Positions 18,858 to 60,600 of a DNA stretch of 61,667 bases are shown in pieces. This stretch comes from Perkinsus chesapeaki ATCC PRA-425. Lineage: Eukaryota > Protista > Perkinsozoa. Positions within the stretch are counted from its first letter, which is position 1. Every line of letters begins with the position of its first letter. The DNA is taken from contig JAAPAO010000151.1 of assembly GCA_013115145.1 (NCBI GenBank), positions 1 to 61,667 on the forward strand. Reading direction: 5' to 3'. The position numbers and the translations under genes were made by a program. The notes below the pieces were generated by a model. The model saw nothing but the letters and a program-made list of their open reading frames with translations, made no database searches and was not told the DNA's origin.

Positions 18858-19018
18858 GGTGAAATCAGAACAGCTACAAAAAATAGGAAAACGGAAAATA
18901 CGATTAAATGCATGAGAAACCGTCACTGGGATTCGAACCTGCGGCTGTTATTAACCACAACTTCACGCAAGATTATGAAGCCTTGTAAATCTTTGATGAA
19001 TTGTATTTTACAAATAAA

Positions 19019-19094: not shown

Positions 19095-22000
19095 TCTTGC
19101 CCAATGCAATTTACTCCGCAAACTATGGAACCAATCATCCAAGTGTTGTGTTGTCGATACAAACGGTACCGGAGACATGCCTAACAGAACGAGAAATGTG
19201 ACTCATCCAGTCCACTCGGTCATCACCTTTAGAGAAAACGGAGAATTTAAAATCCAGATTCTTTAACAGACTCAACTTGCCTTCCTTACTATATCAAAAT
19301 CAACCAATAAATTTCCAAAAATTTTCCATGAAACTTTAAAAAATACTGCCTTATACAAAGTATTAAAATTTCCGGAAATTTTCCGAAATTTTCCCCAACG
19401 TACTTGTCGTTATCCGAACTCTGTTTCCCCTATTCAGCTCGATATTTGTTGCTCCATCAAAACTAGCAATCGGCAAGGTCCTCGATTCCTTCGGAATTCC
19501 AACCTGCAATCAAAAGGTCCCTGGTTCGAATCCCCCGGGAGGCATTTTTTACTTCAATTGTTGCTCCTGCTGGTAAAATCAATGGTCGCTGAGACAGGCC
19601 GTGCGGCGCTATCGGTGTTACCAGAATACAGGGCACATTTGGGGCAACCTGAAAAAATGGAAAATTCATGGTTTAATATCTACCTATTTTTTCAACAAGT
19701 TGTTCTACTTGTCGGTAAGGTAGAGTACCAGTCGTTCACCGAGGAAGTACTAGAGCGACGACCGTTACTTCTTCAGAAAATGAAAATTTTCAGTCGATTT
19801 CTCAAATTTTACATAAAATTTTCATCTATGAAGATCCTTGTTGGAGTTCGAGCATGAATGGCAAGCGAGATTCATGGAAAATGAGGAATTCTGAGATTGA
19901 AATGATTATCTGGACAATTGCCAGCCTTCCGCACTTCAATCATCTACAATCGGACAAAAGGGGGAATGTTTTGGAGATGCTAGGCAAGTCTGCTAAAATC
20001 GAACCTCCAACCGCGGTAAATCCACGTGAAGATCATCATGCTACCGTACCCCGGTTATGCTGGTTCGAAAAGTCATCAAACCTGCGAACTGCTCATCTTT
20101 ACTAAGCAGTGGGGCAAATTGAAAGATTGGAGAACATCACAGATTCGGAAGGCCTCAGTAATTTCCTTACCAGACTTCCACCAGCTGCCATGCTATATGC
20201 ACTCGAACCACTCGGTGTCGCTATTATCAATCCATCAGCTTGGTATTGGGTCATTAGTTGGCCGTCAACGTAGAAATCAAACTTGTGAAATGCTGATACG
20301 CATCCTCTAAGACAAAGGAAGAATATAATCGATCACGTGATCGATTTTGACAACTGATAAATGTTTAGAGCGTCTTGAATTTGTTTTACACAGATATCCA
20401 ATCTATGTTTGAATGTATACGTAGTCAAATAATTAGGGAGCCAGCTTTTGAACAGATACTGACTAGCAAACCTAAATCGATCACGTGATCGATTATCTTA
20501 CCTCGCAATCAAGCACTCGTTCAACACTCTGTGGATTCCAAGAACCTTTGGATCTTCCTCAGACTGGATCACTTCACATCGAAGTCGAGACCGAAGCGTG
20601 CAAAAAACTCTCTAAAAGTAAGGAATCTTAGCTTGAACCGTACAAGATACAAACTAGGTGAACTTTCTACCTTCTTTTTTGCTGCCTCGACATCTTTATC
20701 ATCTTTTCCCAGACAATCCTGTACCGGCGCAACTATCACTTGATTCAATAACGTCTTGAATCTACATTGCACCAAACAAAATGCATCCGAACTGCACCAG
20801 AATGACCTAATATACTTATGTCCTAAACAATATCATTTCATTTGCCCTGTTGTACCACACAACGAAGCTATTACAGTACCCGTCAACTGAGGACTGTATT
20901 TACTTCGCCGAGCTAGGCTGCGAAGTTTTAAACATAGAGGGTTTAATTTACGACAATTACATTGCGCACCTCTACATTGCTCAAAACAGTCCTTGGTGAC
21001 GGGTACTGTAACGCTCGCTTCGAAATGTGATCGCCAACGAACCGCCGCATGCTTGATTTAATTTCCCCTCCCAATCTACGACCTTACTACAGCTACTTTA
21101 ATTACAAATGATTCTCCCCGAGGCAGAATGACCGCGTGAAAGAGAAAATATTCCAAGTTAAATTGGCAATTCTGGCACGCGCAAAATTTTCGCTCGCCCA
21201 TATCAGTAACTAGGCATGAAACGGTTACAATATTTTGACAAGTGGGTCTGAACTACCATATGCGTAACATATCCGAAAATGAGCACTAAACTTGTTCCCG
21301 TTGTGAAGTAAGGATATTACTTCAAAATATTCTAAGTTTATTTGGAGGACTGTAGACCAGAGTTGGCCGAGGCGGCGCAAGTGAAGAATATTCTCTTTAC
21401 GTCTGTTCTGACTTTCTTTTTCACTATTCACGAATACTTCACATTATTTCTGCTATCAGATCATAATGGTACGATAAACACTTATAGGTTTACCGGTTTT
21501 ACTTTTTGACCTGAGTTATCCCTTATAACAATGTCCGAAGACACCTGCCGGCTACCTTCTCACCGACTCGATACAGAAGTCATACCATTCATTGCCGTGA
21601 GAAAATCGGTCGGAATTTTTCCGAAATTTTCCTTCCTTGCCAACAGACGACCACGTCGATATATTCGAGCAGGAAGTAGTTTTTGTAAATTACTTAACTC
21701 AGGTAAAAAACAATGCCAATCCTGTCCAGCTGCCGCATGCTGAGATTCAAGTCAGGAACCAACCGCAGCATGAAACAAATCGTCGAGCAATTACGATTTT
21801 TGAAAGGCAGCCTTCGCCCAGTAATTTCACCAATAAGCTCAACAACATATAGCTCTGAACACACCACGTATACTTTGGGCCGTGAACTGAACCAGCCATA
21901 AATTTACCCTTTCGATCAAAAAATCACACAAGACGCTGAAAAATGAAATTTATACTCTTCACCACGCCTGAAAGTGCTCATTCTCGACAGCGATATCCGC

Positions 22001-23355
22001 TAAATACGTTTTTTCTATCAGAATCGAACACACTGCAAATATAAATGATCGTGAATATCTCTCCCAACTTCCCACCTATCAAATGGATGGGGTGTCAGAA
22101 ATCCCAAGCTTCCCAAAGCAAATGCCACCACCGGAGGAGGCATCACAGTCATAGGTCGATTTCCTGGAGGGCTACCAACATCGGCCGGAGAGGCTGGTGC
22201 GTTTAGGTCATCAGCAGAAGCCGGGAGAGCTGAAAATTGACAAATAAAAAACGCTTCGCTCCGCTAGAATCACATTACTAACCCGGAAACAAGAAAAACT
22301 ACAATGAAAAAACGCTTCGCTCCGCTAAGATCACCGAATTTCTCGTTCTATGCATTATACGGTTTTGGCGTCTTTGGAACACATTTTGGAATTTGCTTTC
22401 TATTATATTCCTTTGCACTTTGATTTCTAGTTTTACCAACACTTCTCCCCGTGACATTGAAGAACAAATGTATTCAATTAAACACCCATTAAAAATGCCC
22501 CCACCAGGATTCGAACCCGCGTCGTCTTACATCGTCCTTCCTCCAACCAGTTGATAGTTCTCAATACCGTCCCATCTCCCCCGAGACACACAACCAAATC
22601 AACCATCAATTGCTGATCCGAATTCTGCTCAGTTGCCGACTCCGTATGATGCGAATCATTTTCATTTTCGATTCCATGAGGGGCAAATTCGGCGAATCTT
22701 CCACATCTAGCGGGTGCGATACCACCAACTGACAGATAGAAAGACCAAATCGATCACGCGATCGATTTAAAATGATGTTCAACTAAAATTCTTCTCTCTA
22801 CACGAATTCAATTACTGAGTGACTGATGATATATGAGAATCCCACAACATTTCTCACTCACACCACACCGCTCTCACCAATCTTAGCAACACGAATTTCA
22901 CGTGAAAAGTTGCCCTTGTAAAATTATTTAATCGATCAACCTCCAATCCGTGACAAGACTCCAAAGACCATCTTATTATTCGCAGAATAGTTACACACTA
23001 ACTCATACCAAAACGTAACATTTGACATACAGATATTCGATATTGGCTCCAACTGTCCACGCTTTAGTCTACCTTAAAATACAGTGCCCCAAGGTTTAAC
23101 ATTTTAAGTCAGAGTTAAATAAATATCTTTTCAAAAAGTGAAGTGCAAGCTTCAACCTCCCCCCGATATAGTACCATCCGGATCGTTAGGATCCATCACC
23201 ACACGAATGTCATACGCAGTTTTAAGCCATCTACCAACTTCAAGCAGAGCCGCCTTCGCTCGATTACTTCCCCATTTCTTTGTCACCAATATGACTTGCG
23301 GACGCGAGCTCCTGACAGAGAGAGTCACGCGCCACAAAATTCCGGACACCCTCAT
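19083..23355 (-). CDS. NADK: NAD kinase (copy A), multi-exon
   Basis: Exons encode [116 protein letters not shown] and [18 protein letters not shown]-stop. Start codon uncertain. Confidence 0.88.
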
Positions 23356-23683
23356 ATGTCTTATAATATTACATCTCCACACTAGCCAACAAGATATTAC
23401 TATTGAAGAGAAGAAAACCTCAAAAAGGGCTGAAAAGTCGTCAATTCTAGTCCGCTACAAATGACTATCGATGTACAATACTTCCCAAATCCGCGAGGAG
23501 GCACACAGCGGAACGCCCCTTCAAAGCTGCTCAAACGTGTTAGTCTTTATTATAAAGTAGTAGATAGTACCATACTATTACAATACTTAACACTTGATGA
23601 TGATATAATCCAGCTCACGATATCATTACCCAACATTGTCCAAATATCAATTATCACTGAATTACCTCCCCCCCCCCAAATTA

Positions 23684-25588
23684 CTACCAAGCCAAGTTGA
23701 CATTCCTGCCATCTCGCACCAAATGACTCTTCGGTAACTGCGGTACTCCATCCCCAAGACTGTCAAGAGTGTTCAAGTTGGCCTGCGATCTAGCCAACCA
23801 TGCAATGCCTTGAATGAATTCAACGACATCTATGTTACCCGACCTGGAGAGAATAGGGAACACAAGTGATAGAGTTCGAGCAGCTGATAATGATTCGGGG
23901 CGATTTCGATAGACTATGTAATATACACTAAACAACTCCTGGGTCCGTGAAAAGACGTAAATTCAAAAAAATTATGAAAATTACGTGGCCACTCCAACTA
24001 AATACATACCATGAGGAGTATCTTCGTCAGCCAGATGGATACCCAATAAAATTCCAACCTTATAAATTTTCCCCGCTACGTTCCCCGAGCCCGCTCGCTC
24101 AATATCACCTGTCCCTATCAAATGCTGTAAAAGCGCTAAGATACGTATCTTTAGAAAGTGGAACCCTCTTCGGTGGGTGGCCGCCTGATGCTTCATAAAG
24201 GCCTGAAAAGACGAGAAAAGAGAAAAAGAAAATTGAATAATTTCTATCTGGCCCGTTCATCAGTTCCACAGATCACGAAAAGAATTATTCGGCGACAAAG
24301 CGGGTATGTTCACCGCACTGAGCTTGCAAACATCAACATAGTCGAGTGGGCTCCTGTAGTACGTTTCGTCTCGAGTTCTCGATTATAAGGTTCCGAGAGC
24401 ATTCAAGTATACCCTCCGCGACCCGGCCCGCCGATGCTCTCGATAGGCCGGGATTTTCGTGCAGATTAAAATTCGCTATTTATCCACTGCAGGGCAACTA
24501 ATATAATATTATCCTCGACAGTCGGAGGGATGATATGGAAGTGAGAGATATTAGTTTTATTATCATACTACCTCGAGGAGAAGGCCTCAATCCAGGGAGC
24601 CTGGAAAACACCTTCGCCTTTACTCGATTAAATGTTTCTGAAACCCAGCCAATCGAGCATTGACTGGAACCTAATTCTACTGTGTAAAATAAATTAAGAA
24701 TCGACTATGGACTGGGATAACACTTTGCTATCGTATCGATTGTACGGTAGGAGGAGGGGCGACAGATCTGTCTGTGACTTTCCGTTCATATCTGTCAGCC
24801 TACCCAACCCAGCCAAAACTGCCAAAAACCGCCCAGAATTTTCCTAGAAATTCCGTTTCCTCGCGAGATAGCTACAACGTAGAGCCATTCCAATACTGAT
24901 AGAGATACACTATGAAATTTTCAGAAGTATTAAAAACCTGCGGGATGCCTATTGCACTATATAGCGGAGGAAATTATATAATCGAACACCGCCGCGGGCG
25001 TGGCCTCCAGTATTACTAGAGTACTCCTCGTAATTTATGAAATAGTTGACCAGAGCAAATCCATTGTCAAAGTCGGAGAAGTCGAGCGTCTTCTTTCCTC
25101 TCGCCAAAGAATTGAAAATCGATATCAGATGTTTCATCGTCGCGCGATTGAAACCAGTACCTGACATGTTTTGTATCTTGCACGCTCAGCCTAAAGATAC
25201 TCACGCTGTCTTAAACCAACCACAAACTTCTCGTCATTCCACCAGTCTGGCATCGGGCCTGCCGGCGCTTCATCTGCCCTTGTCGAGATGCACCTCGCTT
25301 GAATTGGCAGCAATGCAGACGTTTGGGGAAGCAACGGTGGAGGCGCGAACTAAGGAGATAAAATGGTTCAATGGAATCTATCCTTAATTCTATTATTTTA
25401 GGATCTATTTACTAAATACGATTTATTTACTAAATAATTACTATACTAAATATGGTATTATAATATAAATATGACGCAATTGATAATTGTCAATGTAACT
25501 TTATTACCGTCGATGATGAAGAGAAGGCATGAGTGACCGGCATGAACCCCCCATTTGTATTGGTTCGTCGAGGCGGATTTGATGCCAT
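23684..25588 (-). CDS. EF-hand calcium-binding protein (NCS/calcineurin-B-like), copy A, multi-exon
   Basis: ATG at 25588 (MASNPPRR). Exons give LRQRTGFNRATMKHLISIFNSL and AFTAFDRDRSGNIDVVEFIQGI. C-terminus homologous to copy B (VRDGRNVNLAW vs VRDGRSIKLAW). Confidence 0.75.
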
Positions 25589-26514
25589 TAGATTATAGAG
25601 GGGAAGGAGGAGGCAGCGGTGATGAGTGGTGAGACGAAGGGGAGAAGAAGACAAAATGGTGGGAAAAGGAGATAATTAAAAACCCAGCTGAAGTGACCTC
25701 AAGCATATCTTGCACGCTTGACCTCAAGATATCTCACTGCTTTCATCGAAAGTAGATTACATGAGGTAAAGCTGAAGCAATCTTCGGATAATATTGAATA
25801 ATTATGATCATTATTCTTACCAATTTTGTATCTTCCGCGCTTGACCTCAAGATAATTTGTTGTACCTGCTAATTTTCATCGATTTCTCGAGATGCCCAGC
25901 AAAATTTGAGATTATCGGTTCTGAAGTGTATCGGATGGGGTTCCTACTCCGACCCAATTTGTATCTTGCACGGTCAATTTCAAGATACCGCCTTCCAACA
26001 AACTGATTTCGAGGCGCGCGCCAAACAAACAGCACAGTATAAAAGTCGTTCGCCCAAAAACCTATTCCATATCTTTTCTGCCAAGTCTTGACCTTCTTTG
26101 ATGCTGAATACTTCTGGAAGTCCTCCACAACAGTTAAGAAATCAACCCATCTCTGGTGAGTCTTTCGATACAATGCAATGGTAAACGGCATAGAGTTCGA
26201 TAATTATCTTCAAGACTTCTTCATTTACTATCAACTTAAACTTCAGTAACTATTCAATATTACTATTAATTATATTGACTAGATTACTACACTTGTGCAA
26301 CATGCTCGTATCCTTCACTCTATAGCTGTCAAACTAGTTTGGCAGAGGTGTAGATAATTATCGAGGTACAAGTAACTTTTAGTGAATTATACCAATCGTG
26401 AAAGCTTCACGATTGGTATAGTTTCACGGTGAAACTAATTCGGATCGTTGTTTTTATTTGCCCGAAAGCCACCACTACTTGGAGAAGTGGCTCGCTTCCC
26501 CATATAGTATTTTG

Positions 26515-27115
26515 TTAGCTTCATTGGCTTGACTCCTGAAGGGTTCTTCAGTCCCAGAATATGTTCCTTGAATCAATCGGGACCATTACTGGTGGTTGAT
26601 CAAAAGATTTCAGGTCTTCTCGAAAGATACCGCATGGAGCTCTCCAAGCTGATTGAGAAAACTATGACGGGGTCAAATAAGGACAGCAAAGAGATTCTGT
26701 TAAGAAAGCTAGAACTGTCGGATGACAGGTTCATGGAAATGATCTTCGCGGAAGAGTTTGGTGAAGAGACTGATCCCATAGCAGCTTTCCGCGACAAGTA
26801 AGCTTCAAAAATTGGGGAAATTTTGAGAAAATCGGGGATTTTTCGCGGAAAATTTCGAGTAAAAGTATCTCGGGAAAAGTGCGTGACATTTTACAACGCT
26901 GATTGGAATGAGAATCATCAGATTCACTGAATGCCAACGATCGGGAAAACTGATATTTTTGTGGGAGGTTTTGATGATCCCCTATGACTTCTGGAATTTA
27001 TACCACTGTTGATCATTGCTGAAAACTGAGTACAGATTTTCAGATACGTTGCCTCGAAGGAACCGTTACGAGTGGAAAATGCCGGGCGAGGTGGTGACGG
27101 GTCGCCGGACAGGAA
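26515..27115 (+). CDS. Exons of a hypothetical protein
   Basis: Protein-like frame 26529-26798 (helical, E/K/L-rich) ends at a GTAAG donor followed by an A/T-tract intron. Remaining exons unresolved. Confidence 0.35.
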
Positions 27116-30100: not shown

Positions 30101-33100
30101 TGTCGTGAGCGCCTCGGCCTCAGACTGGCGGGAACAGTTTATGGAGGTGGTCTCATACGGACATCCACGTCTGGCTTTGCAACTGATCATGGAGTCATCT
30201 TTCCCCTTCATCCGGAAGAATTCTTTGGTTTTACGCATGCTGAATGTCGGAATTGGAAAGCATCTATCTGCGGCTTAATCTCACCGGGGGAAAAATCATT
30301 AAGGGCAAATTCTCCGCAAATTCCTGGCGCTCGTGTATGGGGTCCCGGCAGGTGAAAAGAGCTCAGTGGCTTGAAAACTTCAGTGCTTACAGGTCTCAAG
30401 CTAGAGAGAAAATTATAGAGAAACACCAAGTAGCTGCGTTGGAAAACCACTTGATCATCAATCATTGATGCGTCTTTGTTCACTAGAATTATATTTCCTA
30501 TCAAACTTCTTTCTATAACATCTCCATACTGCTAAGAGCACTTCTGGGCTTTCAAGAAACATGTGTTTATGAGGTTGCTTGGATACCTGACTACGGGCAA
30601 TTTTCGTATCGACTCATCTCAGGAAATCAGAGAACATCCGCGAACGCCAGAGCTTGACGATGCGATTTATAAACTGTTCAGAGCCCTCGCGAGCACCCTC
30701 CACAATGCGATTACCAAGAAAACATTTTCAAGGTGAAGGTCGTGGGAACGCTTTGGACGCGTGGTGATTAAGTTAGTATTGGATATTCTGGCACCTGGAA
30801 TCCGGGGACGCGTTTCCCCAAATGTTCGGGGAATCTTTGAGTCGATGATTCGGAGGATCAACGACTTTAACCATCGAGAAACACGTTCGTATGGAGCAGA
30901 TGCTAATAGCACTCAACGCTATGATTGCGCGAGCTGGCGTGCTGGTCAGATTCCTGCGACCGTTGTTGAAGTCGCATGACGGGACGAACATCGACGCCGC
31001 CGGCTCATCGGAGCGTCGTAGCACATCCCTAGTTAAAAGACGCGTGCAGGAGGGTGGACCGAGACCTATGGGGGTAAAGGGCCGTCGGCGGCGCCACTTC
31101 GGTAGCAGCAGCGTTCATCTAAGGTTCTTGACCGCCTCTTCACACTTTTCGACGCCAGCGAATATGGCAGCATCTGTCAGTATGATTTTGTCTCGACCAT
31201 AGAATTGTTTTGGAAGGTAAAGTCATTGGGAAGTCCGACTCGGAATCTTTGGGGCTGTCGCGATGAAGAAGAGTAACGAAAGATTGATTACGATTTTCTC
31301 ACCGGTCGGTGGTGGTGGTTCAATATAACTGTAGAATCGGTAATTTGAGCTCAAGACTTGAACTTCAAGTGGCTTGCTAGAATCTATAAGCCTGCGAAGT
31401 ACAAAAGAAACCAGTTTTCTATTTGTCCAATATTCTCTCTGATTTTCTATTGGCCCGTTCAATAGGGTCCTGTTGATGCCCAGCTGCGCTGTGCCTTCCA
31501 CGTTTATCGGCTGTCGAACAGTCACCGGTACGTCCGAGGCAGGTCGGTTGAAGTGGTTACACGAGAAGATCTTGTAAGCATATCTTAGCTTCATGCGAGG
31601 TTTGAACACGCCTCAGTTTCGCTTGATTAAGCTGGATGCACCTGACTGTGTGTGGATGACCGGCGACATCCGCGGACTCTTGAAGATCTTCTGTTCAAGA
31701 GCAGACGAGTGTCTAGAACGTAAAAATCCAAATCGATTACGCGATCGATTCTGTGTCTCTCAGGCGGCTTGCGATATGGTTCGTCAGTTCAAGGTCTTTG
31801 GGAGGCACAAACGCTACATCCTAGATTCAATCAAAACAACGTAACCATACGACGACTGAACCGCACGGAGCTGACCTCTTTAGATTTTCCTGTATGATGA
31901 CGAGGAAGTCGAGAAGGATGACACTCGAAAGTTCATAGACGACTTAATCCAGCGAATCTCTGAGGAGGACGGATACAACTTAACAAGTGGCGCAAGTACG
32001 AGAAGTCACCATTTCTCTTGAATGCCGGATGATACCGTCGATGACAAGTTGTGAAACGGTCGATCGATGGCGGCCGTAAACGGTTCACGACGAAGAAAGG
32101 GGAGTCCGCTTGGGGGGACGCCTGCCTTTATGCGTTAATGCGTTAAACTATAACATTCTAGCATGCATCTTAAAAGCGATTCATCCACCTCTCCTCTATT
32201 TGAGTATCTACTCTGGCTCATATTTGGCACTAGCCAAATCTCCGGTTATAAATGTCACTCTGGGAAAATTCGTCGGAAGTTCACTCGGCAGCACACGTCG
32301 ACTTCACGCGCGTACTTATATCATACAATGCATACGAATACGAATATCTCAACAATGTCGAGCTACCACCATGATTGCTTCTTCTCTGTACAGCCTGCTT
32401 TTGATTGGTATTATACAGTAACATTCAGTGATACATCTAAAATAAATCTTTTTTGGTATATATGGTATGCTGGGCGAGTCTGACCCAATCGGATAATTAT
32501 ACAGTAAAGATCGGACCCGGTCAGGTCTCTATTGTACAATTAGCATTTTCTGAGCGAACCGAGTTCAGGTCCTATTCGCGACTATATAACGTTCGACGAG
32601 TTCAGATCGACGGCGCGAGCGTGCTCGTTATCAAAATTCTTTGATCACTTGGTAAGTTCCGTGAGGCGATGTAAACGCATAATTATCGGCATCAGATTTC
32701 TTGCTCCAACCTACCAAAGCGGAGATCCGCATGCAAGTGATGATTGCCTTCATCCAGGCTACTATGCTGCCTTGTGTTCTCCAGTAGGTTACTCCTGACC
32801 TGGCCATCAGGGAATTACTCGCTCTTTGAAGGAATAAGTATAAAGGAACTTCCACACGCCTTCTGTTTGTCCTCACAACCGCGAACGAAGGGGACGAACT
32901 TGCACGCCTCGCAAGCGGCGCGGGCGCCAGCAGCTTCTGATGGCCCAACGAGGATGGAGCACAGTAAAGTGTAGCACAGATAACGAATCATTTACCGGGC
33001 AATACAAGAGCATGACTTAAAATTAGAGATACGAAACAACTCGACCATGGCGATAAAAGCAAATAAACTCCCTTAAGACGTTTTAAGAGTCTTAAAACAA

Positions 33101-43884: not shown

Positions 43885-44125
43885 ATATGTATCGCATCCT
43901 CTAATTCATAGTGGAACTCAACGTCAAACCATAGTTGAAACAACGATAACAGTTGGAATATATCCGACCAACTAATAGGAGTGAAGCTTGTAACAGAGAG
44001 CTTATTATAGGATGTTCACCTCAAACTTGGAAGAGACTAAAGTTTTATTTAGAAAGAACTGACAGCAAATGTACAACAAACTCTGCTGAGCAAAGATATA
44101 AATCGGGTGCTCGAAATCGGACAGA

Positions 44126-44595: not shown

Positions 44596-45543
44596 AATTT
44601 TTTGAAACTGAGTCGACAAAAATGATAATTGTGGACCTTGATTTTGCGATATGAGACAAATCCCAGTTCGCGTATAGCGTATCAGGCGCCACTCGCTTCA
44701 TTGTGCATCATGCACAGTGTATGCGTGTACAGAGTGCACCATGTTTGCTTTAACTCGGAAACTCAACACGTTACGGAGGATAGCTAGCCATGATTAGCGA
44801 TCTAATAGAGTTATAATTCATTATGAGGCTGGTTTCCTCAGAACCTACTGTAACCGTTGCAGTACCAGGGCCTACATACTAACTGACGAGCGGGAAAAAC
44901 ATGTCACCTAGCGAACAAGTCCTGTATGATTGGGATTGTGCAAGGAAAAGTACCTCCTCCCTGCTTGATTCTGTAGATTGAGATAAATCACCTTGCTGGC
45001 TCCCTCGTAGATAGAGTCAGAGTCTAAGACTCTGTTACGTTCTGTTCATTTACTGATGGCCCCAGTGGCCCAGAAGGTTTCTCCCGTCAATGATGGGCCG
45101 TCATACCTCATTCTCGCACCCCCCCACAATTGAGATACCACGTGGTTGTCGTACTATTAGCAGATATATATCATACGAAAGTCCTCACCTGGGAGTACAG
45201 CACCTTTCAACTTTATAATGCAACTCCCCAGTTGCAGAACCCCACGTTGTACAGCAACGCTTTTACACTCGATTTGTCCAATTTAAACTAATTGTAGCGC
45301 AGGGTTGAGGTCCCTGCAGCACAACTCGTGCTCCATGCTTTGTTGACCGGGTGGAACTCCCTCCGAGGACATTCTACAATGTCAGTTCTTGGAGACAGTC
45401 GGCAGTACTGATTCAGTACATCGCTCAGAAAGGTAAGAGTTTTATTTAACAGGTTATTATTTGCAATGCCAATAAGCGTATTGGGACTTCATGGTGAACA
45501 CAAAACCATCAACTGTGGGAAGTTACCCGTCTTGCTGTAGAAT

Positions 45544-48718: not shown

Positions 48719-50328
48719 TTATTCAAGATGGGAGTAACCATTCTGTGAGGAACCGATCGCCGAAACACCCTTCGGCTTCCGGACGTGCGCCTCTGCGTCG
48801 GCGACGTAGACGTCGGCCTCGCCACGCGCGTCCTCCTAAAGACAAAAAAACAAGTCGCGATCGTAGTTGGCTTTATCTTACGGGAGCTGCTCGAAGCTCA
48901 TTGGCCTTCTCAGCCTCGCGAGTATCATTAGTAGGAATCAGAGGTTCAGTCGAGCGCCTAAGATTAACGAAATGACAAGACCAGGAAATGAACCAGGGTC
49001 GTTAGAACTAAAGACGAACGCTCTACCGCTACGCCATAGAAGACTTACTCTGCGTCAGGTAGGCCTGCATCAGGGTTTGATTGTTCTTGCTGGACAATCT
49101 CTGGCGTTTGCACTTTCGGCAAAACTGCTGTTCCCTGGACGACCGGTGTGGCGGTCGCAGTTGCTACCGCTGGTTGAGGAACTTCTATCTTTGCTACCAT
49201 TTCTGGTATGGTTTGTGACAGAGCGTCGACACAATCACGGTTCTGTGTAACCGTCGAGGAGAAGTACTGCGACAACTGAGGGAAAGAGCTTTTGAATACG
49301 AGCTGCTTGCACGAAGAAATGTGAACATCTTTCGAGTAGCCGTAGAAAATACACTCTAAGAGGAGATCTACAGATCGACGATCTAAAATAACGAAGTGAA
49401 AATCGTTATTATTAACGGAAAACCTAATTTATAATTTTCATGGGAAGCATGAGATATTCATGCACTCCAAACGTAGGTTCAATTCATGAATCTCCAGTGG
49501 GTCCCGATGAGGTTCAGCTTAAATCTTTTCGTGAATCCCCCTTAGTATAGTTGAATAGTGTAGAGCCTGGGCAGCCAGTGAGCCGGTCAGGCAAGGTAAT
49601 ACGTTTAACCGAATCAGTACGAGTTAAAAACCATTCTCACCGCTTCGACAATTTCCCCGACATCCTTCTGTCGTCGACCGAGTATGTCTTTGATGTCTCT
49701 GTCCACACTGCGATCTAGACGATCGCAGTTCTCCTGTGCTTCTCTGAACTTCACCAGATTCTGCAAAAAATTTAAAATTTCCGGAAAATTTCCAAAAAAT
49801 TTACTCTGTCCAATTTTTCCTTAGCAGAATCTGAGCTCGATCCGTTCTCAACTTTCTTCTGGTATTTCTTCTGCAAGTCATCCGTCTTGACCTCGTAGTG
49901 CTTCACCAATCCGTGCGCTCTATCTCGGTCAGTCAGATCCGTCTGGGCAATGTAAAGAGCGCTCGCGCAGATGATCGATTATATTAACGCTCACCCTTAG
50001 TGTCTTGATTCGGCCGTCCAGTCTGTCAATCTTGCCCTTGGCTCTCCCGAGACATGCTAGAGAGTTTTCACCGCTATGATTGAAATGCGACATTTGCTCC
50101 GAGAACACAGCGAATGCGGCGGAGGTGTCCTGAGTAGGACAGATTTTGCGTGTTATGAAAAATATCTTCTGATAGAAACCTTTCTTTTATTTCTCCTAAT
50201 CTAGAAGCACGTTGATGCTCTAGGTATGCACTCACCTCACTGCCGGCAGTGGACTCTGTGCTAGTGGAGCTCTTCGGGTCGGCTGCCTCCCGAGAGAATC
50301 TTGCAACATTGAGATATCTCGGGTTCAT
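48719..50328 (-). CDS. Coiled-coil protein, BAR-domain-like, with a low-complexity C-terminal tail; multi-exon
   Basis: Exons give KIDRLDGRIKTLRTDLTDRDRAHGLVKHYEVKTDDLQKK and EKAQENCDRLDRSVDRDIKDILGRRQKDVGEIVEA, followed by a P/T/A-rich tail. BAR assignment is by resemblance only. Confidence 0.6.
48973..49045 (-). tRNA. Degenerate full-length tRNA-like sequence filling a 91-nt intron
   Basis: TGGCGTAGCGGTAGAGCG (A box/D arm) ... CGAC-CCTGG-TTCATTT-CCTGG (B box/T arm), inside intron 48958-49048. Confidence 0.5.
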
Positions 50329-50379
50329 CTGCTGCTGATTGGCGGTGATGTGATCGACTTCCGAGGAAAGTTGCTAAAA

Positions 50380-50452
50380 TAGAGGACGCAGAAATGGAAC
50401 CAGAGGCCTTTGGTATACAAAACCGATGCTTTAACCGCTAGGCTATTTCGGC
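50380..50452 (-). tRNA. Pseudo-tRNA, Thr(TGT)-like
   Basis: GCCGAAA-TA-GCCT-AGCGGTTA-AAGC-A-TCGGT-TT-TGT-AT-ACCAA-AGGCC-TCTGG-TTCCATT-...-TTTT. 5' two-thirds tRNA-like; T stem and acceptor 3' strand decayed. Confidence 0.55.
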
Positions 50453-50680
50453 AAATATTCTCACCAGCAACTTGGAGTTGTAGTCCAATAAATCCTTCCT
50501 CTCGCCGACCAGCGGATCCTCATCAAACTCCTTCACGCCGAACATCTGAGCATCTCGCCATAATTTCGCGGCGCGTGACCGTACTCTCTTACCTTCTCCT
50601 TCATACTCCTGAAGGTCTTGTTATCAAACCATGAAGTCATAATGTTAGTAAATTATTAGCAATAACAAATCTGATGGAAA

Positions 50681-50880
50681 GTTTGATAGGAAATATGTTA
50701 CTAGTGATACGGAGGAGGAGATATAATAGAAAGGAGTTTGATAGGAAATATGTTACTAGTGATACGGAGGAGGAGATATAATAGAAAGGAGTTTGATAGG
50801 AAATATGTTACTAGTGATACGGAGGAGGAGATATAATAGAAAGGAGTTTGATAGGAAATATGTTACTAGTGATACGGAGG
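50681..50880. repeat. 55-bp tandem minisatellite, 3.6 copies
   Basis: Identical units start at 50681, 50736, 50791 and 50846. Confidence 0.95.
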
Positions 50881-51466
50881 AAATTAAGTCAAATTTGGTC
50901 TCTCCCAGTAGTAAGCTTTTATAGCTCACTGTGACTCCTCGACAACATATCCTTACCGATCTACGATGACCTACTAGAATTCATACCGACACTTCCACTA
51001 ATTACAATACTTCCCACAATAACACAACAGACGTAATAAAAACGATTAAGTAGTATCAGCAAGTATGAAATCTAGTAATCTTAAACACTCTTGCATTTCC
51101 TCATCGGTCGCCTTCTCCCCATGTCTTTATATCACTCCGAATGAGCGCCTCACAATCACCACTGGTTGCTTGGAAACTGATGAAGGTTCAAAAATAAATC
51201 AAAGACTAACTTTTTCGAGAAAAAACTAATGGACAAATTTGAGCAAATATATTTAATAATCGACGAAATTATCATTTTCATATTTTAGGACGTAATCGAA
51301 ATTATGTGACCAATACAATTGGTCGGAAATATAAGTTTTTGGCACTAAAGCGGAAAATCTGAGAAATACTCGACTCGACTAAACACACATTTTAAAATTC
51401 CCTATGCTGCAATAGAATCAATTTCAAACCGTAAATTCCATTTTTCCCAAAATCCATCCTCCCTTA

Positions 51467-53063
51467 TTACACATCAAATTCGATCTCCTCTTCCTCTCCT
51501 CCACTCTCCTTGTTCAATCTACCACTCATCAGTCTGACGGCCCATTGGGAGCGCTTATTATCGGGACGATCACCGTCAATTCGACCAACTACAAAGATGA
51601 CATTACTGAGCCAGCAAGAGCAGAAAATAACAATTATCAGTTCAAAATAAGGAACATACGGCACTGCTGCATATTTGTAAAATTCATCGACGGCCCTCCA
51701 CCGAGCCGTAAAATTCTTCGAGGACTCGGCACAGGAAATTAGTTCTTCGAAGCAAAAATGATCCCCTCTCGATAGCAGCTTCGGATACCATGACAGACTT
51801 ATCAGCTACTTGCCGTGAGAGACAGACGATACTTCGGGAAATCAAAGATTTCCCACCCCCTGCTGTGAAGGCGAGGAGAGGACACAGACATTCAAGCTCT
51901 GGTAGGCGGCAGAGACGATTATTATTTTTAAGCAATGCTCTTAAACCTATCAAAACCCGGGCAGATGCATCTGTGAATTAAAAGGAGTCCACTTCGATTG
52001 CCAGGCTAAGTTATTGATAATTTTTACTTCTATTACGTTCTTGGATGACTGGTGTCGTTCAATGAACCAATTTTGAACCAAGTCAGATTCGATTCCAGAA
52101 CTGCTTCTTAAGCGTGAAATGCGACACTGGAATCGATTCTGAATCTCCGTATTGATTTAACGAAACGTAAACTTAATTAACGTAATTTTTACATTATTTA
52201 TTTAACGTAAATTTAAATTTTTTTAGGGAGGCTGATGTTGAGAAAGTCAGGGGGCCATCTGGCCCCACAGACATAACTTCCTCAAGAATTGAAGCACCCA
52301 CATGAAATAATTGCTAAAATGTGTTCTTAGGGTTAAGGTTAACATTGTATGCATTCCACCTGAGCCTTCATTACGACATTCTCGCAATCAGCAGCGTATC
52401 CTGTCGAGTTCAAGTCCTTCCCCGATTACATAACCGAAGCCGGTTCCCTTATTACCAGCCAAGTAAGCATACAACGCAACTCGTACTTTCGACCCTTCCG
52501 CAACAATAACGTACCTTGGAAAGGTCCCAGGTTCGATCCCGGCATGCCGCATTATTACTTTGGCTGCAATAATGCCGGCGGCAATCCCAACTGTTTGGTG
52601 AATTCGATACCGAGAGTGGTGTTGACCAACTGAGGCAGCCTCGATACTACTTCATCGCTGACCTCCGGTGGATTGCACAATCTGAAGGAGACCAAGGTGA
52701 CCTAGAAAATATCTTTTGAAGAACAGGCGAGCTAATGTGTGATATATTTCGATCTTCCTTACTTGAGCAAAGTCTCTGCAATTCTCCGCCAATCCTCCTC
52801 GGTGACATCCGATGGTATGCAAGGAGGATACTTTAGGCATCTGAGTTGATAACCAACAGCAGTGAAGCAGAGAAATCATATCGGACCGGGGTGAATCTTT
52901 CCGAAGTGCAATAGGATTGAACATGCTGCGTGGAGGACTGTGGGGTAGAAGGTATCTTTCCCGAGGCATGAAGAAGGATAGTTTCGAATGAAGGAGAGGT
53001 AGCGATATAATAAAACAGTGTCTCGGCGTCCCAAGTTGGACCACGATGAATACTAAATCTCAT
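51467..53063 (-). CDS. Hypothetical multi-exon protein
   Basis: Phase-consistent exons (IPSDVTEEDWRRIAETLLK|SPWSPSDCAIHR; LLLRKGRKYELRCMLTWL|DLNSTGYAADCENVVMKAQ) separated by short GT-AG introns. Ends and full structure uncertain; no family recognised. Confidence 0.45.
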
Positions 53064-54037
53064 AGGGGCTGTGGTGGGAATGATAATCGAATTACCCGTA
53101 AGAATGTTGTTAAGTTATTGAGTTGCATCAGTGCGTCAAATCAATACAATTAAATTAATGAGAGCTATACACTTTAAACTGGAACTTAGATGTATTAAGA
53201 ATTACAATTGACAAGAATAGCGGCGAGACTCTCCAGCAGACCGGTACTAAAGTGTTAGGGATTTCGGGTTATAATACTACAGAGACTAATAGGCTACTAA
53301 CATTCGTTATATAGCGGGAAATGGTAATAAGGAAGGGAAGATCAAACTGGTCACTTCTGATAGAAAAATGGGAATCCAAATTTTAATTGGATTTTCTTAC
53401 CCTTTCGCTGCAACAAGGACATTCCCGCTTTTAGCGGCTCTAAAGAAATCACGATGAGCCTCATCGAGATTGATATCCGGTAAAGATACGGTGAAGCGAC
53501 CTAATTAAGTATCTTAGGTTGAAGCGTGCATGATACTATAACAAGTTCAATAGTTACCTTTCGGGGATTCCATTCCAGGTGGACATTTCTTTTCGTTGTA
53601 GTTTCGCCAAGTCCACCAAGCAGCCGTCAAAGTCACCGCCGCAACCGCGATGAGTATCTTAGGTTGAAGCAGGTCTTTCGTATATAAAAAAGATTCCTCC
53701 ATTATTAATAAAAATCTTTTAGCGGCCTCAAATGATCCCAGGTTCGATCCTCGGTGAGAGCATTTTTAATGTATTTTTCACATTTTTGGTCGCAAATGAA
53801 GGAGCCAGCAATCCCCTTTCTACGGTCGTGAGTGCTACCCTAAACGCATACGACCTCCGATCTAGTCTGAATCACGCGCTGCGTTACCGACATTATAATA
53901 AAATTATATCTCCTCACTTATGAAAATATCTTCGGTGGAAGAATGTTTGGCACCTAAAATATCTCAGCTTGAAGCATGCATCCCGCAAAAGCATCCTAAC
54001 TTGAAGCATGCATTCTCCTCAGTTAGTAATCATCTCT

Positions 54038-56625
54038 ATGGAATCAGCAACAACAACTCCTACCATTTCCACTCCGAGTCCAGCCAACTTCGACCTCACC
54101 TCCACCGACGACAGTTCCGACTCTACGACTCTGGTTGCTCATCATCAGTTGCACCCACTCAATAAGACTTGGAGCTTTTGGTTAATGTATCAAGCTCAAA
54201 CTAAGGTGATCACTTTACCGCTAATTTCTCCATCTGAGCTTTCTTACCTTCAAGACATTTTTATTTTATTTATCATAATTTTGATGCGGGATATCGTCCA
54301 CGTAGACTTTATATTTTTTACTTCAAGTGGACTTAAACATCGTTATTATTTTATTATTGCAAATTGTATTGTTATGATTTTTATGTTTGTGGGAATCTGT
54401 ACCAAAATCGACCGACAGTAGCGACTTTCTAACGGTATAATGTTACTATGCATATAATTTCACCTGTCACTTCTTTGCATTTCACATTGTGCAGTTTTAT
54501 ATGTTATCGGCTCTCTTTCACCCAGTTAGGATCATCTAACCGAGACTAGACCCATCCCTTCTACTGGTTGACTTCGACCATTTTTACCTATACTTTATAC
54601 GGTCGACTTTCCTCTACCCGCCTTCTCTCGCGCCAATGATCTGTCCTTAGTTCTACACTAGTCATTTTTGGAGATTCTCGCCGAATCCAATTTCATAAAG
54701 CTTCTCTCATTTTCGATCGGAGTGACACCATCACTGTGACGTGACTTGCCGGAAAATTTTCGCTCTTCCCTGCTTCCCAAATCTTTTTCTTTTCTCCTTT
54801 TTTGGTGGAGTTCCTAATTCCTCGGTCAGTCGTCCAGTCTGACCTCTCATCCATCTTCAAGTGGCTCACGGTTGTTAATCTTCAAAGTTGTAACATTCTC
54901 ATACGAATAATTTGCTTTCCTACCGTTACTTTATTTACCGTACGTTATACGACACTTCTTCCTCGAACAGCTTGTATAGTCACAAAGCGGCAGTTACGGT
55001 TTTTGTTTTCATTAAGGAATTTCCAGTAAATTTTTTTGTATATTTACCAGCTCCTGATTCTTGCTCCTCTGCCGGAATTTCGCTTTACTGTATTCCCTTG
55101 ATCAAATTTTCATACCAACTTTTCCTCAACTTCTCCCCTCAGGATAAAAAGGATAATTGGAAAAATACACAGAAGAAGATTTTGGACTTTTCCACCGTCG
55201 AAGATTTTTGGCGAATAGTCAACAACGTTTCGGCGCCGAGTCGACTGAGTTATGCTGACTACAGTGTTTTCCGGGATGGAGTATCGCCGATGTGGGAAGA
55301 TCCAGAATGCGCCAAGGGTGGCCGATGGATTGTGGCAGTTGATCGATTTATGAGACGGGATGCCCGTTCGGAGGGCCAGGAGGAGGTGAGCAACTTTTAG
55401 GGGAGATTCGGTTATAATGTGATATCACTGGATTCGTTCCAGGAAAATGCATCGCCATTTTCGGACAATTCTGTTTTATTTTGGGATGGTTCAAATTGCT
55501 GTGGAGAATTTTATGCTTTCGAGTTTAACTCTCAGTTTGGATCGTCTTTCCAGATTTTGTTAATGTCCCTTTCCAGTGCGTACTAGTGTGCGGTTTTGGG
55601 TTGAGCGATATACATGCTGTTTGAAAATATTTTTTATAAGTATATAAATATTATATAAAAATTTGTTGTTAGTTAATATTTTATTTGGGTATTCCGGTTA
55701 GGAAAATCGATGTCAGTTTGGGTCTCTTAGCATTCGTGAATGATGAGGTGCGGTTTACTTTGTGGGGGTATCGAGTCGGAGGTACTGGAGAGAAATAATT
55801 GTTTTAGTTGTCGAGATTAAGATTGGCAGCGTATCTTCTATTTGCGTGAAATGCATGCTTCGAGCAGATTATCGGGGGGAAAGAAACTACTATCTGGATG
55901 AAATGACACAGGAAGATTGTTAGCGAATCTTATATCGATATGGAATGCACGTTTTAAGCTCATTCTTATTGATGAAATGTACGCTTCAAGAAGATATCTT
56001 TTCCCTGTATGGAGTGCATGCTTGAACCTCTTCTCTCAGGCCTTAGACGAGAGCTGGCTTAATGTCGTTTTGTCTCTTATTGGAGGCGCTGCTTATCATG
56101 ATGAAATTCGCGGAGAAGATTTGCCTGTTTGCGGTGGAGTATGTTCCGTCCGAAAATATAATTGCAAAATCGCCCTTTGGGTTGGGACGTCCGAGGAAGG
56201 GTTACTCTTAAAAGCAGGAAAGCAGTTTCGGAAATCCTTGAAGTAAGGGGGTAATCGATCGATTGATCGATTTGGTATAGCGTCTTATTTTGTAATGCTT
56301 GCGAATATTGAACCCGCGAGGGGCCGCATTCGTTGGTCATTCTTACCATGTATATGGAAGAATATACTAGCAAGAAAAGCTATGAGTTATATCAGGGTAT
56401 CTTAGCTTGACGTGCGCAAGATGCAAAATAGCTCATCGTTACTCCTTCAGGCCTCTCATCGATTATATGACCAATTTGGATAACAACACCTCTTCCGAAG
56501 AAGAAAACTCCCGTCGTCCTGCAAGGCCGTCAGTTCGATCGAAATCAATTCAGTTTGAGTTCTTCTCCAATAACATAAAATCGGCTGCTCCTTTGGAGCT
56601 GCCATTCGTCGAGGAGGAAGAATAA
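54038..56625 (+). CDS. eIF4E: Eukaryotic translation initiation factor 4E family protein
   Basis: Exons 54038-54205, 55143-55385, 56040-56242, 56281-56291 (11 nt) and 56432-56625. Motifs HPLNKTWSFW, FSTVEDFW, YSVFRDGVSPMWEDP..GGRW, DESWLNVVLSLIG, KIALW. Confidence 0.92.
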
Positions 56626-57626
56626 TAATACAATCGATCAACTGGGCGCGCGCTAATTGCAAATAGCGTCTGGAGGCGGTTGTTGTATATTTATTATATT
56701 CTATAGTTGCGCACTGTGAAGAATTGAAAGATTCTTTGTGGGAGAATCTTCTTTGCGATGATTGCTAGCTTGAAAGTATCTTAGGTTGATATGAGATGCA
56801 CGGTCGAGGTTATATATAATGTTACTTATTGACATAATCTAGTTATTGGTACAATCTTCGTCTGCGCATATCTTAGCTTGAACCGTGCAAGATACTTTAC
56901 AGGTTAAAGACTGGCTATACAGTAAAACGGTTGTCGATCAGTAGGTGTTATGATGATCGTTACGTATACTTATATTAGCGCTCTTGTTGAGTTGCAGTTC
57001 TTCAATCATTCAAAGAAATATTTTCTCAGGATACTTCGTAAAACCTTTCGACGAACCAATCTCGATGGGAATGCACTGAACTAAAATAAAATCGATTAGT
57101 GTTATGTGGAGTTTCCCGGACAATTTGCTGGCTCATGAAGCAAGCTACATTGTATGTAGGAGATCATAGAGGAGCATCAGAGATCCGTTAGGTCCACGAA
57201 GAAGAAGAAGGAGGAGGAGGAGGAATGCATTTTATATGCCTTTTGGTTTAATAACATCTTCTGGCATGATTTCTTAATGTGGGAATTAACAACACTCTCA
57301 ATACTCAATGGTGGCGCAATCACCTCAGAGGCGATTGCGTCAAAAATGTCTTCCGAGAAATTGATTTCGCCATGAAGGTATAGGTTTGATAATTCCATCT
57401 TTGGACACTTTCACGACGGCAGCTTTCGTACCGACGCCTTCGGTTCACCCAAGTTGGGGGTTGGATTTTATTTCTTGCGGGATGAAACTTTTTATCGAAG
57501 GAAAATTGAGCGGGAAAATTTTCATTTTACACGACTATTCTTTGTATGGGAAATGTTCACGAAGGGGAAAATATTTAACTGAGTCGATTTTCCATTTCCT
57601 CAGTCATCGTTGAATATTATTCTCGA

Positions 57627-60600
57627 ATGCTAACCGAAGATGACAGTCGTCGGCAGGCTCGGAAATATTCTGGCAATTCTTTCATGCAACAGCGGCTCAC
57701 AGCATGGCAACCTCTCTTGAGTCCTGGGTATTAATGGGAAGGGAGGGAATATACCTCTTAACATCGTTTATCACCAGTCATTTCATTACTTTCACTAGGG
57801 CAGATCAGGGTTGCTAAAAGTGGCTCAAGATTGGTGTGAATCGCTAAATCGCTGCCGATACTTAACCTCTTTCTTCTACTATGAATTTCGTCTACCCTAA
57901 TATTAAATATGTTTTTGAGCTTGTCGTACCACTTCCGCATTGTTTCTCTCTTCGGCCCTATTCAGAAAGGAAAGACGTAAAAAGATACTTCCTCGAGAAA
58001 CTGTTTTTCAGTTTTTTCAGTCTTCAGAAAATTTCTATTTTTTTCAGGTGGGTCATCGCGGCATTCGTTGGATTCGGAGCAGTTTTTTTGGCAATGGGAA
58101 CTGGGCTGTCGGTTGTAAGACTTGAAAGTCTCGTGGGATTTTCTATCGCTTGCTCCAGTGGTGAGAAGTATCTAGATATAGAATCTCATGTTGAAGCGTG
58201 CACGATGCAAACTAGCTTAGCCTCCAGGGACTTCCTGTTTGAAAGCCTATTCAACCTTCCTTATCGGATGGTAGAAATATATCTCTTCACCAAGCTCATT
58301 GCAAGCTTTTTCGTCACGTAAAATACAATCCGACCTCCCTTGATTTTTTTAATTTCGTGGCGCGTGACTATTTCTCATCCAGGCAAATGCGTCGTCTGGT
58401 GAGTATACGAAGGAGTACACTAGATTAAGTGCGAACGGAGTTGCAGTTGTTGAGATTGAAATTGGACAGGACATGCCAGCGGCGTCGACATACCTGTAAA
58501 AAGGTGTCCGAATTATTGAGGGTTTGATGTGTAGTTAAAGGGAGAGGATTCTGTAAGATTTCAGTGAGACTGTGATAGAGGAATTAAGTCGCATGTGTGA
58601 GTTGAATGGTCTCATTACGATTGGTTTAGAACAACACATTCTTTTATGGTATGATTGCCATTAGGAACATCCTTCGATTTTCGAGAAAGATATTTCTGTT
58701 TGGGATGGGTTGGCTAATATTATCAGGTATTACGAGATTGGTGATTTTTATCAGAATCATAGAAGGTTTGTTACGTCGAGATCTGACGAACAGCTAGCCG
58801 GTGATAATCGATCACGTGATCGATTTGGCAGGGTGGCAATATGTAGATCCCTCGAGCGTGAAATTCGGCGAGAAAGCTCCGTCGGAGTGCGAGCCTGCTA
58901 CAGTTGGCAGTAATGGAAAGGTGTAGTTATCCTTGCGCATGCGTGCAAAGATATTTTATAGCCCAGCTTTTAGACTTTACCCTTGCGGGTTGGTGGCAAG
59001 ATCGATCTTTAATGATAGCTTTGTAGTCGATATAAAAAAGAGGAGTTCTTCGAATGAGTGGAGGAGGGCAGAAGTGAACGAAGTGGGTATTAATCTGCTG
59101 CTGTTGCCCTAGCAGCAGCAGGTAGGAATCGTCTAGGCTCACAGAAATACAGTATGTTCATCGTGGAACACTGTAATGGACTTTATGCCAGAAAATATAT
59201 TCCTTTAGCCTTCTGGTTTGATGGGGCGTGGGTTCGATTCCTGGCTGGGATATCTAGAATTTTTGGAGGAAATCGTTTTTGGGAATCTCACCGAGTTTTG
59301 TGGCGCTCCTTTGAATTTTCGCGAAATTTGCGTAATTTTTCGGAAAAAAATCGAACACTGTTTCAATTTCAACACTGGTAACTCATTTTGAGTGTGAGGG
59401 AATTACTTCATTAACGAATTTAGAAATCGATCACGTGATCGATTTATTCCTCAGTCGGCGGAAGTGATTACGTGGAAGGCGGACTTGGCTCATAAATTTA
59501 AGAATTTGGTTCCGAGTGAGCAAGTTGCTGGCGGGAAGATCCGAAATGATGAAGCGTTCGATATGTGGCTGACGAGCATCTTTCCACCGGAGGTTTGTGT
59601 ATGATGGGCGGGTGGTTTTAATGCGACCTGTTTTGTATCTTACCAGCTTCGACTCTAATAGGAATCATGTAACATAATTTATGTTGGTATTTCAAAGTGT
59701 ACCGGCAAACCTGTTCCCTTGTAGAGATACCCTTCGATGACCCTGTGAGACTTTCTTTCTGCCAAGCTGACCTATTTTGTATCTTTCTGGCATATTGCAA
59801 TAAGTTGAAGTCGATTCCCGAAATTACGCATTGTGTCGAGGGGGACAGCGGGCGTAGCGAAAACCGAGGCATGTGGAGCACGCTAGAATGGCCTTCGAGT
59901 TGACCTGTAGTATGCAAGTATCATGCATGCTTCAAGTTAAGATACCATCCAGCGTTGTAGCAGAAGGTCGGTATGAGCCGATATTTGTGTTGAGTAGAAA
60001 AGATCGAACAGCGGCTTGCGACGGATATGATAATGAAGGTAAAGGGGGAAGATGTAAATTCACTAAGGTAATAGGAGACAATAAGTCTACCTATTTTGTA
60101 TCCTGCACGCTTCAACCTCAGGTACCATTTGGTGTAGAGGGCAGAGACCCTGAGTTCCTCTGTTCTGATGGGTACCAACGGAAGCCCAACCCTTCAGGTC
60201 AAAAAACCGGAAAAATTTTTCCCGAAATTTTTTTCAAGGTTGTTTTAACAAGTCCTAATTTTTTTCAGGTTGGGGAGTAGAGAATGCTCATTTTGTCAAC
60301 TGGATGCGACCGGCGGCGAAATCAACATTCCGGAAAGTTTACGGAAAATTCGTTGAGGAACTGCAAGTGAGAGCAAGATTGCAAGATTCCTGGCTTCATC
60401 CTTCGTAGGAAGGTGATGTGATACGGGTGACAATTTTCGACAACTTCCCTGTGTATAGTTTCGGCGGTAAGAAATCGACTGTCGTGGCGAGCGCTACTTG
60501 GTTCGGCGGAAGCAACAAATATTTGAGTTTGGCGTATCTTTTGGGCGGTGGAATATGTTTGGTGTTCGCGGCTATTTTTGGAATTAGTAATATGTTGCTG

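What the first reader, a model, noticed from the sequence alone, without database searches (positions are those of the whole stretch)
20625..60125. Second dispersed module: ~28-bp hairpin GTATCTTGCACGCTTCAACCTAAGATAC in introns and UTRs
Copies in either orientation at 20625, 25173, 25705, 25828, 25961, 53509, 56397, 56776, 56868, 59918 and 60098; partial copies at ~23140, 53654, 53959, 53991 and 56010. The terminal stem GTATCTT/AAGATAC and the loop (GCACG..TCAA) are both conserved. Several abut splice sites; at 60098-60125 the right arm overlaps CAG|GTAC. It may be a miniature transposon remnant, an intronic structured RNA or a protein-binding site.
Basis: partly seen in the sequence, partly recalled or inferred. 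Interest (0 to 1): 0.75.

Follow-up and report, generated by a model that had tools for sequence, protein, structure and literature searches.

The report
Old repeat that builds tiny introns
A roughly 40-letter repeat with mirrored ends makes up whole small introns, or the ends of larger ones, in either direction in this shellfish parasite (Perkinsus); it looks like an old, no longer spreading intron-forming element, not a folded RNA.

Summary
All listed copies exist, and there are three more (58181, 59625, 59769). Genome-wide, 129 copies lie within 3 mismatches of the 28-mer, against 0 for the reversed control.

The window is nuclear DNA of a Perkinsus species (eIF4E is 78% identical to P. olseni). 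The real unit is about 41 nt: the 28-mer plus a conserved 13-nt tail. Its two halves also occur alone (236 and 394 copies).

In three genes whose exons I placed by protein homology, every copy is intronic, in either orientation. Four copies are whole introns of 43 to about 70 nt. Others sit 9-26 nt from a splice site in longer introns.

Several tests gave nothing:
- The 7-bp stem shows no covariation, and the RNA folds no better than shuffled sequence.
- There is no target-site duplication and no longer parent element.
- It resembles no Rfam family and none of the genome's own U1, U2 or U6.

Copies differ from the consensus by about 19%, none are identical, and they are strongly clustered by contig.

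Best reading: an old introner-like repeat family. Whether selection now keeps it as a splicing or binding signal is open.

The parts
20612..20670 (-). Candidate 59-nt intron of a minus-strand gene. It holds the copy at 20623-20650, which is antisense to the consensus orientation used here.
   Evidence: Copy. Donor-like GT and Y-rich TAG acceptor on the minus strand. The strand is inferred, not shown (coding call unclear).
25161..25204 (-). Candidate 44-nt intron (GTGAGT to CAG) filled by the copy at 25173-25200.
   Evidence: removing it joins two open frames on the minus strand. Inferred.
25705..25732 (-). Diverged full copy.
   Evidence: E 2e-3.
25828..25855 (-). Diverged copy.
   Evidence: E 0.4.
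25961..25988 (-). Diverged full copy with tail.
   Evidence: E 1.5e-4.
53509..53536 (+). Best copy in the window (1 mismatch), upstream of the eIF4E gene. A candidate intron at 53480-53553 contains it.
   Evidence: The intron is inferred.
53654..53674 (+). 5'-half copy only.
   Evidence: profile positions 1-17.
53959..54018 (+). Two adjacent 5'-half copies. They end 4 nt before a Y-rich CAG (54020-54022), which lies 16 nt upstream of the eIF4E start codon at 54038. This is a possible leader-joining acceptor.
   Evidence: The acceptor role is inferred.
56010..56039 (+). Partial core in the opposite orientation, at the 3' end of eIF4E intron 2 (55386-56039). The core ends 10 nt before the acceptor.
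56243..56450 (+). eIF4E intron 3 (208 nt). The copy at 56397-56424 is in the sense orientation and ends 26 nt before the acceptor. The other dispersed palindrome sits 6 nt after the donor.
   Evidence: Exons placed with the P. olseni protein P0001; boundaries read.
56776..56789 (+). 5'-half fragment downstream of the eIF4E stop.
   Evidence: E 0.4.
56868..56895 (+). Full copy (3 mismatches) downstream of eIF4E.
58181..58208 (+).
   Evidence: D6, D12; E 3e-5.
59625..59648 (-). 3' half plus tail only.
   Evidence: (D14).
59769..59792 (-). 3' half plus tail only.
   Evidence: (D14).
59918..59945 (-). Full copy. Coding potential puts the local gene on the plus strand, so the copy is probably antisense to it.
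60098..60125 (-). Full copy with tail (3 mismatches). The strand of its host gene is uncertain.
   Evidence: disagree on the strand.

Best explanation
This is a family of short interspersed repeats, about 41 nt long: a 28-nt core with 7-nt inverted arms plus a 13-nt tail. The family forms spliceosomal introns in Perkinsus.

A copy with a few flanking bases (a donor 0-20 nt upstream, and a short pyrimidine run with AG 6-35 nt downstream) is a complete tiny intron. This works in either orientation. Longer introns carry copies, half copies or tandem arrays near their ends.

Shown here: the copies are intronic, lie in both orientations, and can be whole introns.

Inferred: the family spread at the DNA level as a unit (introner-like), mostly locally and long ago, and is no longer active. 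Its best-kept positions may persist because splicing, or a bound factor, needs them.
For: - Abundance: 129 copies against 0 for the control; halves 236/0 and 394/5.
- DUF3431 gene on contig C802, minus strand, exons placed with P0121 and P0126. It has introns of 47, 43 and 49-52 nt made of the unit, and a fourth of about 70 nt that contains it.
- Histidine-kinase-like gene. One intron of about 320 nt holds three antisense copies; the first begins 12 nt after the donor and the last ends 11 nt before the acceptor. A 735-nt intron opens with three tandem half copies.
- eIF4E introns 2 and 3 carry copies.
- Orientation against the coding-potential strand is 30 sense to 22 antisense.
- An acceptor-like signal follows the copy on one strand or the other in 35 of 52 copies, against about 36% expected. 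The strand it implies matches the coding.
- The tail is conserved in both orientation classes, so the 41-nt piece behaves as one DNA unit.
- Density differs about 20-fold between contigs.
- No copy pair is identical, and mean distance from the consensus is 19%.
Against: - No target-site duplication at any boundary.
- The inverted repeat is internal, not terminal.
- No autonomous partner or longer parent element was seen.
- No subfamily linkage among the variable sites.
- Some columns never vary (positions 3, 5, 22, 24, 26 in 50 copies). That fits selection on each copy better than neutral decay. In the position-unbiased sample this is only borderline (p about 0.03-0.06).
- Gain or loss between species was not testable here.
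Confidence: 0.55

Rival explanations
1. It is a selected splicing cassette read on the RNA. The arm and tail supply the branch region, and the copy sets the acceptor for tiny introns and perhaps for leader joining. Abundance would then reflect function, not past mobility.
For: Acceptor-like signals cluster 18-21 nt (sense copies) or 6-13 nt (antisense copies) after the core. Validated introns place the copy 11-26 nt before the acceptor. Some columns are invariant. Two half copies end just before a CAG that lies 16 nt ahead of the eIF4E start codon. The arm AGATACA can pair with UGUAUCU beside the branch-binding box of this genome's U2.
Against: It is used in well under 1% of introns and is very patchy, which is odd for a general signal. 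It works in both orientations, although the tail is asymmetric. Copies also sit at intron 5' ends. Complementarity to U2, U1 or U6 is no better than for shuffled sequence.
Confidence: 0.2
2. It is a palindromic DNA site for a dimeric or multi-domain DNA-binding protein. This would be an intronic regulatory element with two mirrored ATC/GAT half sites and a nearly invariant GTGCA core.
For: Invariance is symmetric in both arms whatever the orientation, and the TGCA core is nearly invariant. Half copies lie just upstream of the eIF4E start codon. Copies are clustered by region.
Against: No binding data exist. The unit includes an asymmetric tail. Copies coincide with whole introns, which a binding site does not require. 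The likeness of GTGCA to known apicomplexan AP2 sites is recalled from memory only.
Confidence: 0.1
3. It is a structured intronic RNA hairpin with a function of its own.
For: 7-nt inverted arms; 87% of stem cells pair.
Against: Pairing equals the shuffled control (87.4% against 87.7%). There are only 2 double changes, and 15, 11 and 11 copies break pairs 1-28, 2-27 and 6-23 without compensation. Fold energies are -0.6 to -9 kcal/mol with z-scores of -0.7 to +0.8. No Rfam family matches.
Confidence: 0.03
4. The copies are internal fragments of an ordinary long transposon.
For: None found.
Against: With the core masked, the flanks of 73 copies share nothing longer than 54 nt, and those shared pieces are neighbouring short modules.
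Confidence: 0.02

Closest known systems
Introner-like elements of dinoflagellates (Symbiodinium, Polarella; bioRxiv 10.1101/2020.10.14.339549)
   Same: They are repeat families that are themselves introns in many unrelated genes. Some classes create introns in either orientation and take splice sites partly from flanking sequence. The host lineage is sister to Perkinsus.
   Different: Those elements have terminal inverted repeats and 4-8 nt target-site duplications, and many are young (tip lengths 1-4%). Here I found no duplication, the inverted repeat is internal, the unit is only about 41 nt, and the copies are about 19% from consensus.
Introner elements of Amoebophrya (PMC7789003)
   Same: They are intron-filling repeats in a related parasitic alveolate, with complementary 5' and 3' parts and predicted hairpins.
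   Different: Amoebophrya introners have 8-20 nt inverted repeats at the intron ends, 3-5 nt direct repeats over the boundaries, and non-canonical splice sites. The introns validated here are GT-AG, and the arms lie inside the intron.
Introners of Micromonas and Aureococcus, and fungal introner-like elements (as cited in PMC9860276 and PMC7789003; details from my own knowledge)
   Same: Many similar introns arise from one repeated element.
   Different: Those elements are usually around 50-200 nt or longer and show recent bursts. In the part of the PMC9860276 supplement that is held, Perkinsus species appear only in a species trait table. They are not mentioned in the main text of PMC12130899.
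MITEs
   Same: Short, non-coding, with inverted repeats, dispersed and locally clustered.
   Different: This unit is below the usual size, has no terminal inverted repeats, no target-site duplication and no known parent element.

Membership tests
Introner / introner-like element | One repeat family makes up introns in many unrelated genes. | tested here: met
   Copies lie in introns of the eIF4E, DUF3431 and histidine-kinase-like genes. There are 129 or more copies genome-wide.
Introner / introner-like element | The copy is co-extensive with the intron and carries or recruits the splice sites. | tested here: met
   Three validated introns of 43-52 nt are made of the unit, and a fourth of about 70 nt contains it. 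In one of them the donor lies inside the core.
Introner / introner-like element | Signs of transposition: target-site duplication and terminal repeats. | tested here: not met
   No duplication beyond the shuffle control at any boundary for k = 3-8. The inverted arms are internal.
Introner / introner-like element | Presence or absence of the intron between close relatives (recent gain). | not testable with these tools
Earlier notes of this scan report shared positions in sister species. Divergence within this genome argues against recent gain.
MITE | Terminal inverted repeats flanked by a target-site duplication, derived from an autonomous element. | tested here: not met
Structured RNA family | Base pairs kept by compensatory change, and stability above background. 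| tested here: not met
Branch-site / U2-pairing element | Complementarity to the U2 branch-binding region beyond chance, at branch-point distance from the acceptor. | tested here: inconclusive
   The distance fits. A 7-nt match to U2 exists but is not above shuffles.

The most novel reading that the evidence does not exclude
Tiny Perkinsus introns may be marked by a small vocabulary of conserved words of about 40 nt, of which this is one. A dedicated factor would read these words in either orientation, on DNA or on RNA, to define the intron or to regulate the host gene. The repeat would then be a selected signal, not a transposon relic.
Probability: 0.2. Interest if true: 0.8.

Novelty: new variant of a known kind. 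Interest (0 to 1): 0.5.

Why it matters
Introners are the best-supported source of new introns, and the known cases are young, with clear transposon marks. An old family in the sister lineage of dinoflagellates would show what such elements look like long after they stop moving. This one is only about 41 nt long, works in both directions, and may be kept by selection. It would also give a handle on how introns of 43-60 nt are recognised. I found no description of it for Perkinsus in the papers I could search.

Tried and rejected
- **Stop-free-frame tests.** Tests on the copy flanks gave little: open frames are common on both strands, and the spliced-frame version gave only a weak strand bias (31 to 13).
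- **First coding model.** A self-trained codon model collapsed. A frame-contrast model picked the right frame for 10 of 10 known exons, but it is too weak to fix intron boundaries.
- **Pfam scans.** Plus-strand ORFs at 19.5-25.4 kb gave nothing.
- **Protein search.** The ORF at 59873-60280 found no relatives.
- **U2 pairing.** The idea was not supported above chance.
- **Rfam.** No family matched.
- **Subfamily linkage.** None among the variable sites.
- **Public collections.** The metagenome scan gave 2 chance-like single hits, one of them unrelated to this genome. The prokaryote genome scan gave none.
- **Paralogue comparison.** The NADK paralogue at about 13.7 kb shows a possible decayed copy at the matching place, but the alignment is too weak to rely on.
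Full report
**What the window is.** The window is eukaryotic. It has an eIF4E gene, a CRT-like transporter and a RING protein. The eIF4E exon is 78-81% identical to Perkinsus olseni proteins, far above any other hit. It is contig C564 of a 41.7-Mb assembly in 3544 contigs. Published work gives Perkinsus introns as GT-AG, 39-1622 bp and mostly under 100 bp (PMC3101222).

**The observation.** Only three copies lie within 3 mismatches of the typed 28-mer, against 0 in shuffles. A profile built from near-consensus copies recovers the rest, plus 58181 and two tail-bearing half copies at 59625 and 59769. Genome-wide there are 129 copies within 3 mismatches, split 66/63 by strand, with 0 for the reversed pattern. 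In that orientation conservation continues for 13 nt past the 3' arm, while the upstream flank is not conserved. The 5' part (21-mer: 236 copies, control 0) and the 3' part with tail (18-mer: 394 copies, control 5) are each more common than the whole. The hairpin is therefore a composite of two modules. Tandem arrays of related units, with periods of 26, about 41 and 46 nt, also exist. Regularly spaced matches about 36 nt apart on contig C1906 may be another such array; I saw them only as a match list.

**Where the copies sit.** I placed exons by protein homology in three genes, always exon by exon.

- eIF4E (plus strand; P0001).
  - Intron 3 is 56243-56450. Its copy is in the sense orientation and ends 26 nt before the acceptor.
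  - Intron 2 ends with a partial core 10 nt before the acceptor.
  - Two half copies end just before a CAG that lies 16 nt upstream of the start codon.
- A DUF3431 gene on contig C802, minus strand (P0121, P0126).
  - Three introns of 47, 43 and 49-52 nt are made of the unit, and a fourth of about 70 nt contains it.
  - In the 43-nt intron the donor lies inside the core. The 5' half of that copy is coding (NLSSM) and aligns with NLRSM in the P. olseni protein. This hints that the copy predates the split of the two species.
- A histidine-kinase-like gene on C802, minus strand.
  - One intron of about 320 nt holds three antisense copies. The first begins 12 nt after the donor and the last ends 11 nt before the acceptor.
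  - A 735-nt intron starts with three tandem half copies.

So every copy I could place is intronic, in either orientation, and often close to a splice site.

**Statistics on unplaced copies.**
- A frame-contrast codon model picked the right frame for 10 of 10 known exons. With it, 30 copies are sense, 22 antisense and 21 unclear.
- Copies overlap predicted coding segments less than random positions do: 0.40 against 0.58, about 3 sd.
- A pyrimidine-rich YAG follows the core on one strand or the other in 35 of 52 copies, against about 36% expected from a 20% base rate. The offsets peak at 18-21 nt for sense copies and 6-13 nt for antisense copies. The strand this implies matches the coding.
- The tail is conserved in both classes. 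The 41-nt piece therefore behaves as one DNA unit, with the acceptor tract supplied by the flank.

**What it is not.**
- *RNA hairpin.* Pairing is 87.4% against 87.7% in shuffles. There are two double changes, and many uncompensated breaks at pairs 1-28, 2-27 and 6-23. Fold energies are ordinary, with z from -0.7 to +0.8.
- *Known RNA family.* None matched.
- *Fragment of a long element.* With the core masked, flanks share at most 54 nt.
- *Classical MITE.* No target-site duplication was found.
- *snRNA-derived or clearly snRNA-complementary.* The arm can pair with 7 nt of this genome's U2, next to a branch-binding box that carries an extra U. Alignment scores to U1, U2 and U6 are no better than for shuffles.

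**Age and constraint.** Among 48 independent copies, the mean distance from the consensus is 7.7 of 41 positions. The closest pair differs at 3 positions and no two copies are identical. Variable sites show no subfamily linkage. Positions 3, 5, 22, 24 and 26 never vary in 50 distinct copies, and the TGCA in the loop hardly varies. In the position-unbiased sample the unevenness is borderline, p about 0.03-0.06. In the 100 copies listed, positions 3 and 5 also never change (my reading of that list by eye). This suggests constraint on particular bases.

**Patchiness.** Density is 4.15 copies per 10 kb on C802, 1.78 in the window and 0.22 on C981, although the three contigs have similar ORF content.

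**Reading.** The simplest account is an old introner-like family that spread as a DNA unit, mostly locally. It now forms tiny introns or the ends of longer ones. It is inactive, and the bases that splicing or a bound factor needs have been retained. Related lineages have intron-forming repeats with clearer transposon marks (PMC7789003; bioRxiv 10.1101/2020.10.14.339549). I found no report of such a family in Perkinsus.

**Earlier notes of this scan.** Notes made on other contigs of this genome describe the same family and say that copies sit at the same places in sister species. My within-genome results, an old and non-identical family with one exonised half copy matched in a P. olseni protein, are consistent with it.

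**Safety.** Perkinsus is a shellfish pathogen.

Noticed in passing
window 13642-13672, 17687-17717, 20316-20346, 20464-20494, 22737-22767, 58795-58825, 59414-59444, 56249-56275: A second dispersed module, a 20-bp perfect palindrome (family D4). In eIF4E intron 3 it starts 6 nt after the donor, so it too is intron-associated.
   Followed up: partly
window 17186-17223, 19512-19549, 22491-22528, 52519-52556, 53741-53778; L049:4006-4039 (minus strand): tRNA T-arm-like pieces followed by T runs. ARAGORN and Rfam find no intact tRNA in the window. One validated 34-nt intron of the DUF3431 gene is largely such a piece.
   Followed up: partly
L031:1501-1707 (minus strand): The only U2 snRNA match in the assembly has an extra U inside the branch-point-binding box, and its 5' part is partly duplicated.
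   Followed up: partly
L051:3800-4070 (minus strand): An intron of the histidine-kinase-like gene holds about six tandem units of 41-42 nt. In each unit the two arm sequences of the motif abut directly.
   Followed up: no
L018:2058-2318; contig C1906 17522-17719: A 26-nt satellite built from the 3' arm plus tail. On C1906, a run of regularly spaced matches to the 3' module, most about 36 nt apart, may be another array; I saw it only as a match list.
   Followed up: no
window 61482-61667: Long G and T homopolymer runs at the contig end. They look like a sequencing or assembly artefact (D1).
   Followed up: no
window 50680-50881 and 30480-30525: Three exact 55-nt tandem repeats, with an 87% inverted partner 20 kb away (D5, I6-I8).
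   Followed up: no
window 1542-2402 and 4920-5783: Two tandem paralogues (87-99% identical over the repeated stretches) with a sub-threshold match to DUF6740.
   Followed up: no
window 17808-21632, 49772-49797, 60753-60774: A third short recurring word, of the GGAAATTTTCC type (D8 and D10).
   Followed up: no
L050:5821-6906 (+) and L050:6298-7305 (-): Two open frames of more than 330 codons overlap on opposite strands. Only the minus one has a Pfam match, a methyltransferase. Long antisense open frames make ORF-based strand calls unreliable in this genome.
   Followed up: partly
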